This document shows, one piece after another, positions 7,841 to 55,499 of a DNA stretch of 64,000 nucleotides; the first letter of the stretch is position 1; every line of letters starts with the position of its first letter. A program made the translations under genes and the position numbers. Below the pieces are notes generated by a model. That model did not search any database. It worked only from the letters and a program-made list of their open reading frames with translations, and was not told the origin of the DNA. The DNA is taken from the IMG/VR virus record IMGVR_UViG_3300012988_000001, positions 62,001-126,000 of that record. The stretch is one strand, 5' to 3'.

Positions 7841-7870
7841 TTGACATACGCCGGGGTAAAGATCTATAAT
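7841..7870 (+). promoter_or_regulatory. sigma70-type promoter
   Basis: TTGACA-18 nt-TATAAT. Confidence 0.75.
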
Positions 7871-7920
7871 TTCACACATCGCAGAAAACTGTGGTAAAAA
7901 ATATTGCATTCAAAAATGTT

Positions 7921-7948
7921 GGGACAAACGAAAAAAATGTGATATAAT
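7921..7948 (+). promoter_or_regulatory. GGGACA-class promoter (copy 1)
   Basis: TTGGGACAAAC...TGTGA-TATAAT, 16-nt spacer. Confidence 0.8.
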
Positions 7949-7957
7949 AATGATGTA

Positions 7958-7975
7958 GACAGCGATGTAGCTGTC
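7958..7975 (+). promoter_or_regulatory. GAUGUA-loop leader hairpin (copy 1)
   Basis: GACAGC-GATGTA-GCTGTC upstream of NadM-Nudix. Confidence 0.65.
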
Positions 7976-8006
7976 GGTAATGAAATAACTAAGGAGTACT
8001 TAGAAA

Positions 8007-9116
8007 ATGAAAGAAAAAGTCTATGTTTATATTGGTCGCTTCCAAATGGCACACGTTGGTCATGAAGCAGTAATTACACACGCAGCATCTAAAGCAGACC
8101 GTCTAGTTCTACTAGTAGGTTCCGCAGATCTTGCACGTGATCCAAAAAACCCGTTCACTTTTGAAGAACGCAAATCCGTGCTAGAAGCAATGGCACAACG
8201 TATTGTTACTGAGCAATGGTCACAAGGCCGTTCAGTGAAGGTTGATATTCTACCAGTTCACGACTATACGTATAACAATACTAAGTGGTTAAAAGAAGTA
8301 CAAAACCAAGTACGTTCAGTTACTAACAGTACTGATATTACTTTGGCAGGTTGCCGTAAAGATGGCGATACCAGTACTTTCTACCTTGACTTCTTCCCGC
8401 AGTGGAAACAAGATTTTATCAATGAAGTATCAGAAGTATCACTAACCAAAGTTAGTCGTTCTAGCGGTGAAAAAACCGATTTGGGTTCTGTTGCCATCAG
8501 CAGCACTAAACTTCGTAATCAATACTTCAGTACTAAACAGGTTCCATCAGATCTCCCACAAGAAACTGCTGAGTTCCTAGAAAAGTTCAAAGTTCGTTCT
8601 CCTGAGATTCTTGACAATCTCGTGAATGAGCATAACTTCGTAGTACGTTACAAAGAACAAATGAACACACAGCTTCCTTACAACAACATTCCATTCCTAA
8701 CGGGTGATGCTCTAGTTGTATGTGCTGGTCACGTTCTACTTGTGAAGCGTCGTACTTATCCGGGTAAAGGTCTATGGGCGTTACCGGGCGGTTTCTTCGA
8801 TGCATGGGTTGATCAAACTCAAGTTGATACGGCTCTACGTGAACTAAAAGAAGAAACTAAGATTCAAGTACCTTACAAAACTCTAAAAGGTTCTATTGTG
8901 AAGGTCGATGAATTCGGTGATTTCGAGCGTTCTCTACGCTGGCGTCTAATCACCAAGTGTGCTTACATCAAACTTGATGGTTCCACACTACCAAATGTAA
9001 AAGGCAGTGATGACGCAGAGAAAGCGTTCTGGGTTCCTCTATCTGAGATTACCAAGAATCGCCACATGTTCTTTGAAGATCACTACTCAATCATTGACAC
9101 TATGATTGGTTTATAA
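8007..9116 (+). CDS. nadM: bifunctional NMN adenylyltransferase / ADP-ribose pyrophosphatase (NadM-Nudix)
   Basis: YIGRFQMAHVGH (HxGH), NPFTFEER, SSTKLR; Nudix box GGFFD...TALRELKEET; GSDDAEKAFW; FFEDH. Confidence 0.95.
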   Translation: MKEKVYVYIGRFQMAHVGHEAVITHAASKADRLVLLVGSADLARDPKNPFTFEERKSVLEAMAQRIVTEQWSQGRSVKVDILPVHDYTYNNTKWLKEVQNQVRSVTNSTDITLAGCRKDGDTSTFYLDFFPQWKQDFINEVSEVSLTKVSRSSGEKTDLGSVAISSTKLRNQYFSTKQVPSDLPQETAEFLEKFKVRSPEILDNLVNEHNFVVRYKEQMNTQLPYNNIPFLTGDALVVCAGHVLLVKRRTYPGKGLWALPGGFFDAWVDQTQVDTALRELKEETKIQVPYKTLKGSIVKVDEFGDFERSLRWRLITKCAYIKLDGSTLPNVKGSDDAEKAFWVPLSEITKNRHMFFEDHYSIIDTMIGL

Positions 9117-9117
9117 T

Positions 9118-9663
9118 ATGCTATACTGTCTCTCACGTGATATATTTGACGATTTGATGGCAGTAAAGCATCATGAACATAGCAAGTACGATGGAACAAA
9201 TGCTTGTCATTTCGTACTTGACAATCAAGCAAAAGAGTGTAAACTAGTCAGTACTTTACCGATGATCTTAGCTGCTGCAAGGCAGTTAAGGGATAAGAGG
9301 GAATGGCAAAATGCATCTCTTATAGCACGAATGTGGGTATCAACAGTGTACCCATTCTCATCCGAGGTTATTGACTTGGACTTTAAACACCAAGACATTG
9401 ACGAAGGATACTGGGAGTACTGGTATGCTAGTTTAGGAGCTAAGAAGCTCTTTATTAGTAAAGGATACTTCTCAAACGCAATTAAAGTTAACGGTGGAGT
9501 TCCCCGCTACTGTATAGACGATGGGCTATCAGTTAAGGAATATACGTTATCTGAGATTGAACAAAGTAATCAGTATTTTAAACTGAGTGCTGTCTTCCCA
9601 GCAGAACCACGAATGTTCGCAGACGACAACGCGGAATATATGATTCCTTACAACATAATCTGA
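9118..9663 (+). CDS. hypothetical protein within the NAD operon
   Basis: ORF between the two NAD genes. Confidence 0.7.
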   Translation: MLYCLSRDIFDDLMAVKHHEHSKYDGTNACHFVLDNQAKECKLVSTLPMILAAARQLRDKREWQNASLIARMWVSTVYPFSSEVIDLDFKHQDIDEGYWEYWYASLGAKKLFISKGYFSNAIKVNGGVPRYCIDDGLSVKEYTLSEIEQSNQYFKLSAVFPAEPRMFADDNAEYMIPYNII

Positions 9664-9681
9664 AAGGCGATGTAGCTTTTC
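9662..9681 (+). promoter_or_regulatory. GAUGUA-loop leader hairpin (copy 2)
   Basis: GAAAGGC-GATGTA-GCTTTTC upstream of Nampt. Confidence 0.65.
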
Positions 9682-9710
9682 TTAACACTTTATCCGAAGA
9701 GGAAACAACC

Positions 9711-11189
9711 ATGAAAAATCTAAACGTAAACTTCATTCTAAACGTAGACAGCTACAAAACCGCTCACGGTATGATGATGAAAGAAGGTGTAGTTGCACTT
9801 GAATCAAACATCATTGCTCGTAAGCCTACTCCTTATGCTACACACGTAGTCATGATGGGTATCCAAATCTACCTACAAGAATATCTTGATATTACCATTA
9901 CAACTGCTGATATCGATGAAGCTGAAGAAGAAACCGCATCTCGCGGGGATTATTTCGACCGCCCATTCTGGGAACATATCGTAGAAGTACACAAAGGTCG
10001 TGTCCCTCTACATATCCGTGCTATTCCTGAAGGTACTGTTGTACCAGTAGGTATGCCACTAGTACGCTCTATGAGTACTGATCCAGCAGTATTAGTAATT
10101 GCTAGCTACATTGAAACTCAACTTCAACGTGCTATTCAGTTCCCAACAACTGTTGCTTCTAACGCTCGCAGCATCAAGTCCTTCTTGGCTGATACAATGG
10201 AACGTCACAGTGGTCAACGCTTCGTTGATTACCATCTACACAACTTTGGTGATCGCAGTGCATCTTGCTACGAAGCAGCATGGCTAGCAGGTGTTTCACA
10301 TGCTGTAGTGTTCAGTGGTTCTGATTGCCTAATGGCAAACCGTTACATTAAACACTACTATCACACTAAGAAAAACTATCTAAGCAGTGTGATGGCAACC
10401 GAGCATAGTGCTACCTGTTCTAACTCCGACGCAGACAAACGCGACGACTTCAATATGGCCCTAAAAATGGTTCGTATTTGGGAGAAAATGTGTGATGATT
10501 ATATTGCAAAAGGTTCCGTTGGTATTCCACCAATTGTATCAATTGTAATCGATACATATGATGCATATCGCTTTGTTCGTGAGTTTATCGGTACTCGTCT
10601 AAAAGCAACTATCCAAGAGATCGCTGCTAAATGTCCGGGTGCTAAACTTGTAATGCGTCCAGACAGTGGTGACCCAACAACTATGCCTATTGAAATCCTA
10701 GAGATTCTAGCAGACAAGTTCGGTACTACTCTAAATGCTAAAGGTATGCGTGTTCTACCATCTTACATTGGCGTAATCCAAGGTGATGGTATCGAAGAAG
10801 ACTCTATCCGTGCAATCGTTGCAAACCTTGACAAACACAATCTATCCCTAGAGAACATCGTGTTTGGTATGGGCGGTAAGCTAGTACATCCACCTAAAGG
10901 TCGCGATACATACTCATTCGCCATGAAAGGTTCTGCACAACAACTATCAGAAGGTACTTGGGAAGACCTATTCAAAGACCCAATCACTGACGTTGGTAAA
11001 CGTAGCCTACGTGGTCGTGTAACTACTTACAAGTGCAAACAAAGTGGTAAAATCATGGCTGAACGTGTAGAGCTAGCAGCAGTAAATCCATTCCTAGAAG
11101 ACATGATGGTTGATGTTTATAAGGATGGCGTAATTATGAACCTAAGCACTTTCGATGAAGTTCGCGAACGTGCAAACAAAGGTCTATAA
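9711..11189 (+). CDS. nadV: nicotinamide phosphoribosyltransferase (Nampt/NadV)
   Basis: DSYK, HNFGDRS, ATEHS, VIDTYD, MRPDSGDP, IQGDG, FGMGG, KDPITDVGKRS. Confidence 0.95.
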   Translation: MKNLNVNFILNVDSYKTAHGMMMKEGVVALESNIIARKPTPYATHVVMMGIQIYLQEYLDITITTADIDEAEEETASRGDYFDRPFWEHIVEVHKGRVPLHIRAIPEGTVVPVGMPLVRSMSTDPAVLVIASYIETQLQRAIQFPTTVASNARSIKSFLADTMERHSGQRFVDYHLHNFGDRSASCYEAAWLAGVSHAVVFSGSDCLMANRYIKHYYHTKKNYLSSVMATEHSATCSNSDADKRDDFNMALKMVRIWEKMCDDYIAKGSVGIPPIVSIVIDTYDAYRFVREFIGTRLKATIQEIAAKCPGAKLVMRPDSGDPTTMPIEILEILADKFGTTLNAKGMRVLPSYIGVIQGDGIEEDSIRAIVANLDKHNLSLENIVFGMGGKLVHPPKGRDTYSFAMKGSAQQLSEGTWEDLFKDPITDVGKRSLRGRVTTYKCKQSGKIMAERVELAAVNPFLEDMMVDVYKDGVIMNLSTFDEVRERANKGL

Positions 11190-11196
11190 TCTTTTA

Positions 11197-11223
11197 GGGG
11201 AGTCTAGTACTCCCCATTTTCTT
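11197..11223 (+). terminator. intrinsic terminator of the NAD operon
   Basis: GGGGAGT-CTAGT-ACTCCCC-ATTTTCTT. Confidence 0.8.
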
Positions 11224-11234
11224 AAGAGGTTTAT

Positions 11235-54955: not shown

Positions 54956-55453
54956 ATGCAATACACGTTGAAATCTTACTTTTGTAAGTACAAGATTAAT
55001 GCTCAGGAATTTACTGATATTGAGCTTGAAGCTATTTTGAGTTTGTGTAATAGTTCTGGTATTGAAAATAGTTTTTATACGGCCCAATCATTCCGTAATG
55101 CAGAATTTCATTATTTGACAGCCGTCGATCATGGTGATAAAGTTGCAAAATGTTCACAACATAATACTAAACGTGTAAATGTATCACGTGAGCAAGTGAT
55201 TGATGATTTAAAACTTTATGAAAAAAGTTCGGTTTTTATCAAACAGTCAACGACGGAAACTGATTCTCTAGTAGTATCTGTTTATAGTAGTGGTCACCCA
55301 CACTATTTTACTTATGCTTTTGACTTCAACACAAAAGTAACATACTGTTTAGTAGGAAATCAGTTCTGGGTACGTGCATCACAGAATTTCACTGAAAAGG
55401 AAATATTTAATATGCTTACGATTCAACAAGATGTTGAAATCGTTGTAAACTAA
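54956..55453 (+). CDS. hypothetical protein
   Basis: 165 aa. Confidence 0.65.
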   Translation: MQYTLKSYFCKYKINAQEFTDIELEAILSLCNSSGIENSFYTAQSFRNAEFHYLTAVDHGDKVAKCSQHNTKRVNVSREQVIDDLKLYEKSSVFIKQSTTETDSLVVSVYSSGHPHYFTYAFDFNTKVTYCLVGNQFWVRASQNFTEKEIFNMLTIQQDVEIVVN

Positions 55454-55460
55454 AAAATAT

Positions 55461-55499
55461 GCAGTTTGTTTCAAAAACTTGGGACAAACTGCTTTTTTT
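55461..55499 (+). terminator. intrinsic terminator containing the -35 of the next promoter
   Basis: GCAGTTTGTTTCAA-AAAC-TTGGGACAAACTGC-TTTTTTT. Confidence 0.8.

What the first reader, a model, noticed from the sequence alone, without database searches (positions are those of the whole stretch)
7958..9681. Identical GAUGUA-loop hairpin with covarying stems ahead of both NAD+ salvage genes
Seen: GACAGC-GATGTA-GCTGTC (7958-7975) precedes NadM-Nudix and GAAAGGC-GATGTA-GCTTTTC (9662-9681) precedes Nampt, each about 30 nt upstream of the start codon. The loop and the two closing pairs are identical while the rest of the stem differs but still pairs. I did not notice this hairpin before any other gene in the window. 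Inference: a shared cis-element (RNA-binding protein site, processing site or part of a ligand sensor) co-regulating the two NAD genes.
Basis: partly seen in the sequence, partly recalled or inferred. Interest (0 to 1): 0.68.

Follow-up and report, generated by a model that had tools for sequence, protein, structure and literature searches.

The report
Shared RNA leader on phage NAD genes
Both NAD+-rebuilding enzymes of this 366-kb jumbo phage carry the same small RNA hairpin about 30 nt before their start codons. The hairpin is kept, with compensating stem changes, in every relative examined and found before no other gene, so it is a real, apparently undescribed control element for a pathway phages use against NAD+-depleting bacterial immunity.

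Summary
Hairpins GACAGC-GATGTA-GCTGTC (7958-7975) and GAAAGGC-GATGTA-GCTTTTC (9662-9681) end 31 and 29 nt before the ATGs of NadM-Nudix (8007) and Nampt (9711). The window comes from a Rak2-like jumbo phage, and the two genes form the NARP2 NAD+ reconstitution pathway.

- **Conservation:** in about 15 distinct related genomes both leaders keep a hairpin (P1) at the same place, ending 25-31 nt before the AUG.
- **Covariation:** six of seven stem pairs show compensatory changes. G.U wobbles fit only the sense RNA. The loop stays G-N(1-2)-G-N-A.
- **Second hairpin:** P2 shows the Shine-Dalgarno sequence in its loop (CTAAG-GAGTA-CTTAG, 7989-8003). In most relatives its 15-mer stands before both genes and nowhere else in the genome.
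- **Specificity:** a covariance model finds exactly two strong hits per genome, always these two leaders.
- **Other lineages:** BcepSauron and IME-SM1 have differently sequenced but likewise matched, genome-unique leaders on the same gene pair.
- **Known families:** no Rfam family matches, and the papers searched do not mention the element.

The most likely function is a sense-strand RNA operator that sets or regulates translation of both enzymes through a shared factor. The mechanism is inferred, not shown. Rivals are a passive matched expression module, a small riboswitch, and a processing or antitermination site.

The parts
7841..7870 (+). Consensus sigma-70-type promoter-like site (TTGACA-18-TATAAT), the upstream one of two tandem promoters before nadM
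   Evidence: 12 of 12 matches. It belongs to the genome's class-1 promoter set. Not mapped experimentally.
7919..7948 (+). Class-2 phage promoter-like site (TTGGGACAAA ... TGTGATATAAT, extended -10). The predicted transcript start is around 7953-7957.
   Evidence: about 30 copies of this class in the genome. It is conserved before nadM in relatives. It corresponds to the 'divergent RpoD-like promoter' described for CBB and GAP32 (PMC5259590).
7952..7957 (+). Linear copy of GATGTA directly 5' of P1 in the nadM leader
   Evidence: It is also present in phage 7t3; L062 has AATGTA at the same place. Its meaning is unknown.
7958..7975 (+). P1 hairpin of the nadM leader: 6-bp stem, loop GATGTA, closing pair C-G
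   Evidence: Orthologues and covariation.
7989..8003 (+). P2 hairpin of the nadM leader: CTAAG-GAGTA-CTTAG, with the Shine-Dalgarno sequence (AAGGAG, 7991-7996) lying mostly in the loop
   Evidence: the only such site before a gene in this genome; the one other match to the loose pattern, genome 269470, has no start codon behind it. (in the minimum-energy fold). In relatives the 15-mer CTAAGGGAGTCTTAG occurs only before nadM and nampt.
8007..9116 (+). NadM-type NMN adenylyltransferase fused to a Nudix (ADP-ribose pyrophosphatase-type) domain
9118..9663 (+). Conserved-in-place but fast-evolving ORF of unknown function (181 aa) with no leader hairpin of its own. Its stop codon TGA (9661-9663) overlaps the first bases of P1(nampt).
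   Evidence: The AlphaFold model was unusable (pLDDT 43).
9662..9681 (+). P1 hairpin of the nampt leader: 7-bp stem with one G.U, loop GATGTA, closing pair C-G
   Evidence: Orthologues and covariation.
9693..9703 (+). Shine-Dalgarno region of nampt (GAAGAGGA) with only a weak 3-bp P2-like fold (TCC-GAAGA-GGA). The canonical P2 palindrome is absent in this clade.
9711..11189 (+). Nicotinamide phosphoribosyltransferase (Nampt)
11197..11225 (+). Intrinsic terminator-like hairpin plus T-run that closes the nadM / ORF / nampt unit
   Evidence: No terminator lies between the three genes in this window.

Best explanation
The two hairpins belong to a conserved two-part mRNA leader that is private to the phage's two NAD+-salvage (NARP2) genes. 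P1 is a 5-8-bp sense-strand RNA hairpin. Its stem is free to vary, while four features are fixed: the 3' closing G, the first loop G, a loop G three positions from the loop's end, and the last loop A (loop G-N(1-2)-G-N-A). P1 always ends 25-31 nt before the AUG. P2 is a short hairpin that displays the Shine-Dalgarno sequence in its loop. I propose that P1, probably together with P2, is a translational operator: a common trans-acting factor, most simply a phage-encoded RNA-binding protein, reads the P1 loop at the 5' edge of the ribosome-binding region. In this way it would set or feedback-regulate translation initiation of both enzymes in step. Shown here: the RNA structure, its sense-strand nature, its conservation, its fixed distance to the AUG, and its restriction to these two genes. 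Inferred: that it acts on translation, and that a protein rather than a ligand or a nuclease reads it.
For: 1. Both leaders carry P1 in about 15 distinct Rak2-like genomes whose Nampt proteins have diverged to about 53% identity.
2. Six of seven P1 pairs show double compensatory changes. No shuffle out of 500 reaches the observed covariation, and slid-partner controls collapse. RNAalifold independently predicts P1 and P2 and nothing else.
3. Wobbles occur only as G.U on the + strand: the closing pair is C-G in 17 sequences and U.G in 9. They would be A.C mismatches on the other strand, so the structure is sense RNA and not a duplex-DNA operator. In RaK2 and Muenster the P2 arms are swapped (CTTAG...CTAAG). 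That preserves a hairpin but not a dimer's DNA half-sites.
4. A variable stem with a fixed loop is the signature of hairpins read by proteins.
5. Specificity: covariance model R1 gives exactly two hits above 30 bits in the phage's own genome and in five relatives, with the next best at or below 20.7 bits. Four contigs not used in training also give exactly two hits each. The P2 15-mer occurs exactly twice per genome in five relatives. In IMG/VR, 17 of its 20 sites precede NadM or Nampt.
6. In this window no promoter or terminator separates nadM, the middle ORF and nampt, and the middle ORF has no such leader. A second copy inside one transcript makes sense for gene-by-gene translational control, not for transcriptional control.
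7. What is conserved is the distance to the AUG (25-31 nt), not the distance to any promoter.
8. The same design recurs with different sequences in other lineages. In BcepSauron, CCGTAGTA + GC-AAGA-GC hairpin + GCAAC-AGGA-GTTGC occurs exactly twice in 262 kb. In IME-SM1, GAAGGAGTTTC occurs exactly twice in 159 kb. In both phages the sites lie before NadM and Nampt.
9. Lineage-specific loop types tend to appear in both leaders of one genome: EJP2 has GCGAA and GCGGA, Hallingskeid has GTGGA and GTGTA. This would be expected if one co-evolving reader recognises both.
Against: - No trans-acting factor is identified. The genome has no RegA, RegB or CsrA homologue, and the neighbouring middle ORF could not be characterised. 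That ORF is also missing from the RaK2 group, which keeps the leaders.
- P1 lies 10-14 nt upstream of the Shine-Dalgarno sequence and does not overlap it, so steric repression is plausible but not obvious.
- Hairpins with the Shine-Dalgarno sequence in the loop are common in this genome (86 cases), so P2 as a structure type is not special; only its sequence is.
- P2 shows almost no covariation within the Rak2-like clade.
- XaC1 nadM has a different loop (ATTTT), and Vibrio phage 2.275.O keeps P2 but has a terminator-like hairpin in place of P1. The loop is therefore not indispensable.
- The loop concordance within genomes may reflect one shared ancestry event.
- There are no expression or start-site data; the public runs were contigs only.
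Confidence: 0.42

Rival explanations
1. Passive matched expression module. P1 is a stable protective or insulating hairpin (at the 5' end for nadM, and at the end created by processing or by a second promoter for nampt). P2 is an optimised ribosome-binding site. Both genes carry the same module so that the two enzymes are made in a fixed ratio, and no dedicated trans-factor or signal is involved. The loop would be conserved because it folds into an unusually stable GNRA-like shape.
For: - P1 begins about 3-5 nt after the predicted start of the class-2 promoter for nadM. In Mimasvirus and Eneladusvirus relatives an extended -10-like TGGTATAAA lies 9-11 nt before P1(nampt), and a terminator follows nadM.
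- The pentaloop variants fit G-N-R-N-A, and the first G and last A are invariant, which is compatible with a sheared G.A, GNRA-like fold (my own knowledge).
- Hairpins with the Shine-Dalgarno sequence in the loop are a common design here.
- NARP2 overexpression is reported as toxic or costly (10.1101/2024.02.11.579819), so tight stoichiometric tuning is plausible.
Against: - In this window P1(nampt) is internal to a three-gene transcript with no promoter upstream.
- Other genes served by the same promoter class carry no such hairpin.
- A merely stable loop would not need lineage-specific sequence kept in step between the two leaders, nor a 15-16-nt P2 sequence identical across phages with about 50% protein divergence and unique in each genome.
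Confidence: 0.25
2. Minimal riboswitch. P1 and P2, perhaps through a loop-helix or loop-loop contact, directly bind an NAD-pathway metabolite (NAD+, NMN, ADP-ribose, nicotinamide or PRPP) and change access to the Shine-Dalgarno sequence. The phage would then make the enzymes when NAD+ falls.
For: - The element is strictly restricted to NAD genes across several phage lineages.
- The layout of two small hairpins with conserved loops and a variable linker resembles the guanidine-II class (my own knowledge).
- The second hairpin holds the Shine-Dalgarno sequence.
Against: - No match to any Rfam family, including both NAD+ riboswitch classes, even at E up to 10.
- There is no conserved internal loop or junction, and no pseudoknot or alternative pairing was seen in the leaders or predicted in the consensus fold, though that method cannot predict pseudoknots.
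- The linker is not conserved.
- The two loops are not complementary.
- P2 is missing from nampt in this very window and its clade.
- The BcepSauron and IME-SM1 versions share the design but not the putative ligand-contacting nucleotides. That is unusual for a ligand pocket.
Confidence: 0.12
3. Processing or antitermination signal. P1 is either the recognition site of an endoribonuclease that cuts the polycistronic RNA into separately stable messages, or a boxB-like site that loads an antiterminator so that RNA polymerase reads through the terminators behind nadM and nampt.
For: - The pentaloops fit the G-N-R-N-A pattern of lambda boxB (the boxB pattern is my own knowledge).
- Relatives have an intrinsic terminator directly after nadM with no promoter before the middle ORF, so some read-through is needed.
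- P1(nampt) sits exactly at the gene boundary.
Against: - No boxA-like sequence lies near either hairpin (chance level).
- This window has no terminator between the genes yet keeps both hairpins.
- The fixed distance is to the AUG, not to terminators.
- Antitermination would not explain restriction to two genes among hundreds, nor P2.
- No RegB-type nuclease is encoded.
Confidence: 0.1
4. Chance resemblance, or a leftover of a local duplication with no function.
For: The shared 10-mer alone has P of about 0.03, and about 39 other hairpin cores recur on the + strand of this genome.
Against: - Conservation at both sites in all relatives, with compensatory stem changes.
- Exactly two model hits per genome.
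- Analogous pairs in two further lineages.
Confidence: 0.01

Closest known systems
Phage translational operators read by proteins (MS2 coat-protein operator; T4/RB69 gp43 and RegA operators)
   Same: A small 5'-leader hairpin whose loop is fixed while the stem covaries. It lies next to the ribosome-binding site and is specific to one or a few genes.
   Different: No cognate protein is known here. P1 lies 10-14 nt upstream of the Shine-Dalgarno sequence rather than over the Shine-Dalgarno sequence or the AUG. The loop sequence is unrelated. The same operator serves two metabolic genes. No RegA homologue is encoded.
Lambda-type nut site (boxB hairpin with a GNRNA pentaloop bound by N)
   Same: A short hairpin near the start of a transcript with a G...A-framed loop. 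The pentaloop variants (GTGTA, GTGGA, GCGAA, GCGGA) fit G-N-R-N-A, and terminators lie downstream in relatives.
   Different: Most loops are hexaloops. There is no boxA. The element is tied to the AUG distance and to two genes only. No N-like protein was identified. Membership is not supported.
NAD+ riboswitches class I (nadA motif) and class II (pnuC motif)
   Same: Cis-regulatory RNAs in the leaders of NAD-metabolism genes. Class II also involves the Shine-Dalgarno region.
   Different: No covariance-model match, even at permissive thresholds. The element is much simpler, with no internal bulges or pseudoknot. It occurs in phages of Proteobacteria rather than in Acidobacteria or Streptococcus.
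Guanidine-II (mini-ykkC) riboswitch
   Same: Two small hairpins with conserved loops, joined by a variable linker just before the start codon.
   Different: The loops are not ACGR, they differ from each other, and they are not self-complementary. No ligand is known.
Structures that present the Shine-Dalgarno sequence or enhance translation in T4 genes 25 and 38, and 5'-terminal stabiliser hairpins (ompA, T4 gene 32)
   Same: P2 places the Shine-Dalgarno sequence in a hairpin loop. P1(nadM) sits at the predicted 5' end of its mRNA.
   Different: Those elements are gene-individual and lack a conserved loop shared between two genes. P1(nampt) is internal in this window.

Membership tests
NAD+-I riboswitch (nadA motif, Rfam) | Match to the family covariance model (tandem stem / internal-bulge domains) | tested here: not met
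   cmscan of window 7850-9800 at E up to 10, and of four relatives' loci at E up to 5, found no NAD riboswitch hit.
NAD+-II riboswitch (pnuC motif, Rfam) | Match to the family model; a pseudoknot that sequesters the Shine-Dalgarno sequence | tested here: not met
   No hit. The consensus fold shows only two plain hairpins with the Shine-Dalgarno sequence in a loop. Pseudoknots are not predicted by that tool, but inspection found no conserved complementary segment.
Lambda-type nut site | boxB hairpin with a GNRA-like G-N-R-N-A pentaloop | tested here: inconclusive
   Four of the eight G...A-framed loop types are pentaloops that fit G-N-R-N-A. The other four are hexaloops (GATGTA, GTTGTA, GAAGTA, GTAGTA) and would need a second extruded base.
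Lambda-type nut site | boxA element a few nt upstream of boxB | tested here: not met
   No boxA-like sequence lies next to either hairpin, and the window-wide count is at chance level. For nadM there is no room between the predicted transcript start and P1.
Lambda-type nut site | An N-like arginine-rich antiterminator protein that binds the loop | not testable with these tools
   Such peptides are too short and too diverse for family searches, and no binding assay is available.
Protein-read translational operator hairpins (MS2 / gp43 / RegA type) | Conserved loop with a covarying stem, on the sense RNA | tested here: met
   Six of seven pairs covary. The closing G and loop positions G1, G-3 and A-1 are kept in all leaders but one (XaC1 nadM has loop ATTTT). 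G.U wobbles fit only the + strand.
Protein-read translational operator hairpins (MS2 / gp43 / RegA type) | Overlap with the ribosome-binding site | tested here: inconclusive
   P1 ends 25-31 nt before the AUG. By textbook ribosome footprints (my own knowledge) that is at the 5' edge of the ribosome-protected region, but it does not cover the Shine-Dalgarno sequence or the AUG.
Protein-read translational operator hairpins (MS2 / gp43 / RegA type) | A cognate repressor protein that binds the hairpin and lowers translation | not testable with these tools
   No RegA, RegB or CsrA homologue is encoded. Candidates (NadM-Nudix, Nampt, the middle ORF, a host factor) are untested.
CsrA/RsmA binding sites | GGA in the loop of each of two hairpins, one at the Shine-Dalgarno sequence | tested here: not met
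   The P2 loop contains GGA, but the P1 loop does so in only two of eight loop types (GTGGA, GCGGA).
Guanidine-II (mini-ykkC) riboswitch | Two hairpins that both have ACGR tetraloops | tested here: not met
   The loops are G-N(1-2)-G-N-A and GGAGT. No Rfam hit.
5'-terminal mRNA stabiliser hairpin | The hairpin lies within a few nt of the transcript's 5' end | tested here: inconclusive
   This is predicted for nadM. It does not hold for nampt in this window, where no promoter is found and the hairpin is internal to the operon. Transcript starts are not mapped.

The most novel reading that the evidence does not exclude
The leader is a metabolite-responsive switch dedicated to phage counter-defence. 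Either the naked P1/P2 RNA, or one of the pathway enzymes moonlighting as an RNA-binding protein, would couple translation of both NARP2 enzymes to the cell's NAD+, ADP-ribose or NMN state. The Nudix-domain NadM is one candidate: a Nudix protein, CFIm25, is known to read UGUA, and most P1 loops contain UGUA or AGUA (my own knowledge). The phage would then raise NAD+ rebuilding exactly when a host defence system starts to deplete NAD+. Such a switch would have evolved in parallel, with different sequences, in at least three jumbo or large phage lineages.
Probability: 0.15. Interest if true: 0.9.

Novelty: new variant of a known kind. Interest (0 to 1): 0.63.

Why it matters
Nampt plus NadM-Nudix is the NARP2 pathway, by which phages rebuild NAD+ and escape NAD+-depleting defences such as Thoeris, SIR2-HerA and DSR. 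The paper that defined NARP2 notes that it consumes PRPP, raises NAD+ even without a defence system, and was toxic to clone (10.1101/2024.02.11.579819). Control of its dosage is therefore likely to matter.

Neither that paper, which has no occurrence of riboswitch, promoter, hairpin or UTR, nor the CBB genome paper (PMC5259590) describes any regulatory element for these genes.

A compact RNA leader of about 55 nt that is well supported by covariation, private to this gene pair, and echoed by differently sequenced matched leaders in two other lineages gives three things:
- a concrete handle on how phages regulate a counter-defence pathway;
- a candidate new RNA family for Rfam;
- a portable module for co-expressing two enzymes.

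Tried and rejected
- **Duplex-DNA operator for a dimeric repressor.** Rejected. The arms vary freely while the loop is fixed, the G.U wobbles would be A.C on the other strand, and the P2 arms are swapped in RaK2 and Muenster.
- **Terminator or attenuator.** Rejected. No consistent T-run follows P1.
- **Pseudoknots** between the P1 loop and the 5' flank, the linker or P2. No conserved complementarity was found. The one neat case (ACATC before P1 with loop GATGT in SNUABM12) is absent elsewhere and would leave no linker nucleotides between the stems, which I judge sterically implausible.
- **Kissing of the two identical loops.** At best four weak pairs, and none with GTTGTA.
- **P2 as an NAD-specific structure class.** Rejected. 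There are 86 hairpins with the Shine-Dalgarno sequence in the loop in this genome. Only the P2 sequence is gene-specific.
- **Antisense or trans RNA partner in the genome.** None was found; the P2 palindrome matches only itself.
- **Rfam.** No family matched.
- **RegB, CsrA and RegA homologues.** None is encoded.
- **Middle ORF as the trans-factor.**
  - It has no Pfam or PHROG hit.
  - The Atlas gave only a weak hint of 'RNA ligase' (0.83, below a reliable score).
  - It diverges fast.
  - The RaK2 group lacks this ORF at that place but keeps the leaders.
- **Public reads.** Only assembled contigs were available, so there is no information on transcript starts, ends or levels. Near-identical strains show no variants inside P1 or P2. 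One metatranscriptome contig spans 9573-9723, which does not prove transcription.
- **boxA search.** At chance level.
- **KVP40-like phages (ValKK3, TCU-VP04) and RB16.** Their nampt leaders do not carry this element; RB16 has only a generic hairpin with the Shine-Dalgarno sequence in the loop.
- **Marginal model hits** at window 55422-55461 and genome 1303-1360 (about 20 bits). These are not convincing hairpin leaders.
Full report
**What is there.** GACAGC-GATGTA-GCTGTC occupies 7958-7975, and 31 nt lie between it and the ATG at 8007. GAAAGGC-GATGTA-GCTTTTC occupies 9662-9681 and has seven pairs, one of them G.U; 29 nt lie between it and the ATG at 9711. The downstream genes are a NadM-type adenylyltransferase fused to a Nudix domain, and Nampt. 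The window lies at 62001-126000 of a single 366,160-bp phage genome. The closest records are Rak2-like jumbo phages: Salmonella phages 7t3 and Munch at about 81% DNA identity, then phages of Erwinia, Yersinia, Serratia, Cronobacter, Pectobacterium, Xanthomonas, Escherichia and Klebsiella. Nampt plus NadM-Nudix is the NARP2 NAD+ reconstitution pathway, which phages use against NAD+-depleting defence systems (10.1101/2024.02.11.579819).

**Is it more than chance within this genome?** The shared core GCGATGTAGC occurs exactly twice on both strands of the whole genome, both times here. A first-order Markov model expects 0.25, so P(>=2) is about 0.03. Only six C-G-closed hairpins with a GNNGTA loop and at least 5 bp exist genome-wide, and only these two lie in a leader. 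Recurring hairpin cores are not rare in this genome, however: about 39 others recur on the + strand, many of them UUCG terminators. The coincidence alone would be only suggestive. The comparative data decide the matter.

**Relatives.** I fetched the orthologous loci of 14 named relatives, 12 of them distinct at these leaders, and of several uncultivated viral genomes. I then read both leaders in each.
- Every genome has a hairpin before both genes at the same place, ending 25-31 nt before the AUG.
- The stems differ widely: GACAGC, GCCGAT, GCCGCT, CCAAC, CAAGGC, CAAAGC, CAAGGT, AGAGAGT, GAAAGGC, GAAAAGT, GAAAGC, AAGAAC, GTAGC, AGAGAAC. All of them pair.
- The loops are GATGTA, GTTGTA, GAAGTA, GTAGTA, GTGTA, GTGGA, GCGAA and GCGGA, which gives the pattern G-N(1-2)-G-N-A.
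- The 3' closing base is always G, and its partner is C or U.
- The only departure is XaC1 nadM, which keeps a hairpin but has the loop ATTTT.

**Covariation.**
- On a MAFFT alignment, six of seven P1 pairs show changes on both sides. No shuffle out of 500 reaches the observed covariation score, and sliding the partners by one to three columns roughly halves pairing or worse.
- The same holds for 32 model-aligned leaders. That alignment leans towards the model's structure, as the tool warns.
- RNAalifold on leaders extended 20 nt into the coding region predicts P1, a second hairpin P2, and nothing else.
- Wobbles appear only as G.U on the + strand. The closing pair is C-G in 17 sequences and U.G in 9. 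On the opposite strand these would be A.C mismatches.
- The structure is therefore an RNA hairpin on the sense transcript, not a DNA operator or an antisense RNA.

**The second hairpin, P2.** In the window's nadM leader, CTAAG-GAGTA-CTTAG (7989-8003) holds most of the Shine-Dalgarno sequence in its loop. It is the only such site before a gene in this genome. In most relatives the sequence (A)CTAAG-GGAGT-CTTAG stands before both genes.
- With up to one mismatch it occurs exactly twice per genome of about 355 kb in five relatives, always before nadM and nampt.
- Across 2.9 million IMG/VR contigs the 16-mer has 20 sites. Seventeen directly precede NadM or Nampt homologues and all of those also carry P1. 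The other three look like chance matches.
- RaK2 and Muenster nadM have the arms swapped (CTTAG-GGAGTA-CTAAG). That is a compensatory flip which keeps a hairpin.
- In the window's clade, and in Hallingskeid and EJP2, the nampt leader lacks the palindrome and has a weaker variant (ACC-AAAGA-GGT; in the window TCC-GAAGA-GGA).
- Hairpins with the Shine-Dalgarno sequence in the loop are common in this genome as a structure type (86 cases). P2 is special for its sequence and its pairing with P1, not for its shape.

**Specificity.** Covariance model R1, built from 22 leaders, finds exactly two hits above 30 bits in the phage's own genome and in each of five relatives' complete genomes. The next best hit scores at most 20.7 bits, with E above 0.25. 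Four contigs not used for training (L062, L064, L066, L068) each give exactly two hits at the expected places. No other gene carries the element, including the other genes served by the same promoter class.

**Transcript context.** The genome has two sigma-70-like promoter classes.
- Class 1 is a consensus TTGACA-N17-TATAAT followed by ACATCA.
- Class 2 has about 30 copies of TTGGGACAAA...TGTGATATAAT. It corresponds to the 'divergent RpoD-like promoter' reported for CBB and GAP32 (PMC5259590).
- nadM has one promoter of each class in tandem (7841-7870 and 7919-7948). P1 begins about 3-5 nt after the predicted start of the second. This is a prediction, not a mapped start.
- In this window no promoter or terminator separates nadM, the middle ORF (9118-9663) and nampt. 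The unit ends at a terminator at 11197-11215. P1(nampt) is therefore internal to a three-gene message, and it overlaps the stop codon of the middle ORF.
- In Mimasvirus and Eneladusvirus relatives a terminator follows nadM, and an extended -10-like TGGTATAAA lies 9-11 nt before P1(nampt).

What stays constant across these architectures is the distance to the AUG. The middle ORF never has the leader. This points to gene-by-gene action at the translation-initiation region rather than at transcription initiation.

**Other lineages.**
- Burkholderia phage BcepSauron (Nampt about 33% identical) has the same gene order. Both of its leaders share CCGTAGTA, a hairpin with a fixed GC-AAGA-GC core and different outer stems, and a Shine-Dalgarno-in-loop hairpin GCAAC-AGGA-GTTGC. 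Each composite occurs exactly twice in its 262-kb genome.
- In Stenotrophomonas phage IME-SM1 both genes share GAAGGAGTTTC inside hairpins GGAA-GGAGT-TTCC and GAGAA-GGAGT-TTCTC. This sequence occurs exactly twice in 159 kb.
- Vibrio phage 2.275.O keeps the Rak2-type P2 verbatim before nampt but has a terminator-like hairpin where P1 would be.
- KVP40-like phages do not carry the element, and RB16 has only a generic Shine-Dalgarno-in-loop hairpin.

Matched leaders private to this gene pair are therefore a recurring theme, realised with different sequences.

**Mechanism.** The data establish a conserved sense-strand RNA structure whose loop is under sequence selection, at a fixed distance from the start codon, private to two functionally linked genes.
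- **Preferred reading (confidence about 0.4).** I favour a translational operator read by a shared trans-acting factor. A fixed loop on a free stem is typical of protein-read hairpins. A second copy inside one transcript makes sense only for per-gene control. Unusual loop types tend to occur in both leaders of the same genome (EJP2, Hallingskeid), as expected if one co-evolving reader recognises both. That last pattern may, however, reflect a single ancestral event.
- **What is missing.** No reader is identified. RegA, RegB and CsrA homologues are absent. The fast-evolving middle ORF could not be characterised, and it is missing at that place in the RaK2 group, which keeps the leaders.
- **Passive matched expression module (0.25).** This cannot be excluded. 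It fits the predicted 5'-terminal position of P1(nadM) and the G...A-framed, possibly GNRA-like loop.
- **Riboswitch (0.12).** This is attractive because of the NAD restriction, but it is weakened by the absence of any conserved pocket-like feature, by the loss of P2 at nampt in this clade, and by the different sequences in other lineages.
- **Processing or boxB-like antitermination (0.1).** This fits some details, namely the G-N-R-N-A pentaloops and the terminator after nadM in relatives. It does not fit the lack of boxA, the AUG-anchored spacing or the gene restriction.

**Comparison with known families.** No Rfam family matches the window or relatives at permissive thresholds. Membership in the nadA and pnuC NAD+ riboswitch classes, in guanidine-II and in CsrA sites was tested and not met. 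For nut/boxB the boxA feature is not met, the loop feature is inconclusive, and an N-like protein could not be tested. The element works most like a phage translational operator, but it cannot be filed in any named family. The NARP2 paper and the CBB genome paper do not mention it. These literature searches cover only the open-access library held here.

**Verdict.** It is a new RNA motif of a known general kind. The mechanism remains to be tested at the bench.

Noticed in passing
window 7919-7948 and about 30 other sites in the genome (for example genome 38056, 80428, 107613, 139615, 160216): A repeated phage promoter class, TTGGGACAAA-N-TGTGATATAAT. It matches the 'divergent RpoD-like promoter' (-35 TGAAACG) reported for CBB and GAP32. 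A separate class is TTGACA-N17-TATAAT followed by a conserved ACATCA around the predicted start.
   Followed up: partly
window 9118-9663: The ORF between nadM and nampt keeps its place in most Rak2-like phages but evolves very fast: 53% identity to 7t3, against 92% for Nampt, and it is barely detectable in the Mimasvirus and Eneladusvirus relatives. It has no Pfam or PHROG match, and the AlphaFold model was unusable. In RaK2 and Muenster a homing endonuclease sits there instead; in RCIP0023 nothing does.
   Followed up: partly
L004-L010 (relatives), directly after the nadM stop codon: Mimasvirus and Eneladusvirus relatives and XaC1 have an intrinsic terminator (for example GGAGTAC-TTCG-GTACTCC-ATTTT) between nadM and the middle ORF, with no promoter before that ORF. 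The window, 7t3, Hallingskeid and EJP2 lack it. The operon architecture therefore differs between clades while the leaders persist.
   Followed up: partly
L004:2726-2743, L005:2529-2544, L008:2475-2490, L010:3195-3209: A further covarying hairpin lies over the stop codon of the middle ORF, 8-15 nt before P1(nampt): TTTGGT-ATAA-ACCAAA, TTGGC-ATAAT-GCCAA, ATGGC-ATAA-GCCAT. It doubles as an extended -10-like TGGTATAAA. Muenster has an unrelated hairpin (ATTATTAC-ACAGA-GTAATAAT) at the same place.
   Followed up: no
L002 (Klebsiella phage fENko-Kae01 annotation): The record's notes say that both the adenylyltransferase and the phosphoribosyltransferase were 'identified with LC-MS/MS analysis'. This suggests very high expression or association with particles.
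   Followed up: no
genome 107613 and 201929 (outside the window): Other class-2 promoters are followed at once by different hairpins. One of them (genome 201929) looks like a terminator or attenuator with a T-run. Leader hairpins of other kinds may therefore regulate other genes.
   Followed up: no
genome 33789-33806 (outside the window): This is the only other GATGTA-loop hairpin with a C-G closing pair (GGTTTC-GATGTA-GAAATT). No ribosome-binding site or start codon follows, so it is probably chance.
   Followed up: partly
window 55422-55461: The best non-NAD hit of the covariance model scores 20.7 bits (E about 0.14-0.27). It lies just upstream of another class-2 promoter and is not a convincing hairpin leader.
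   Followed up: partly
many + strand sites genome-wide: Seven hairpins share the core GA-CTTCGG-TC, and several more carry C(TTCG)G tetraloops. These look like a family of UUCG-loop terminators.
   Followed up: no
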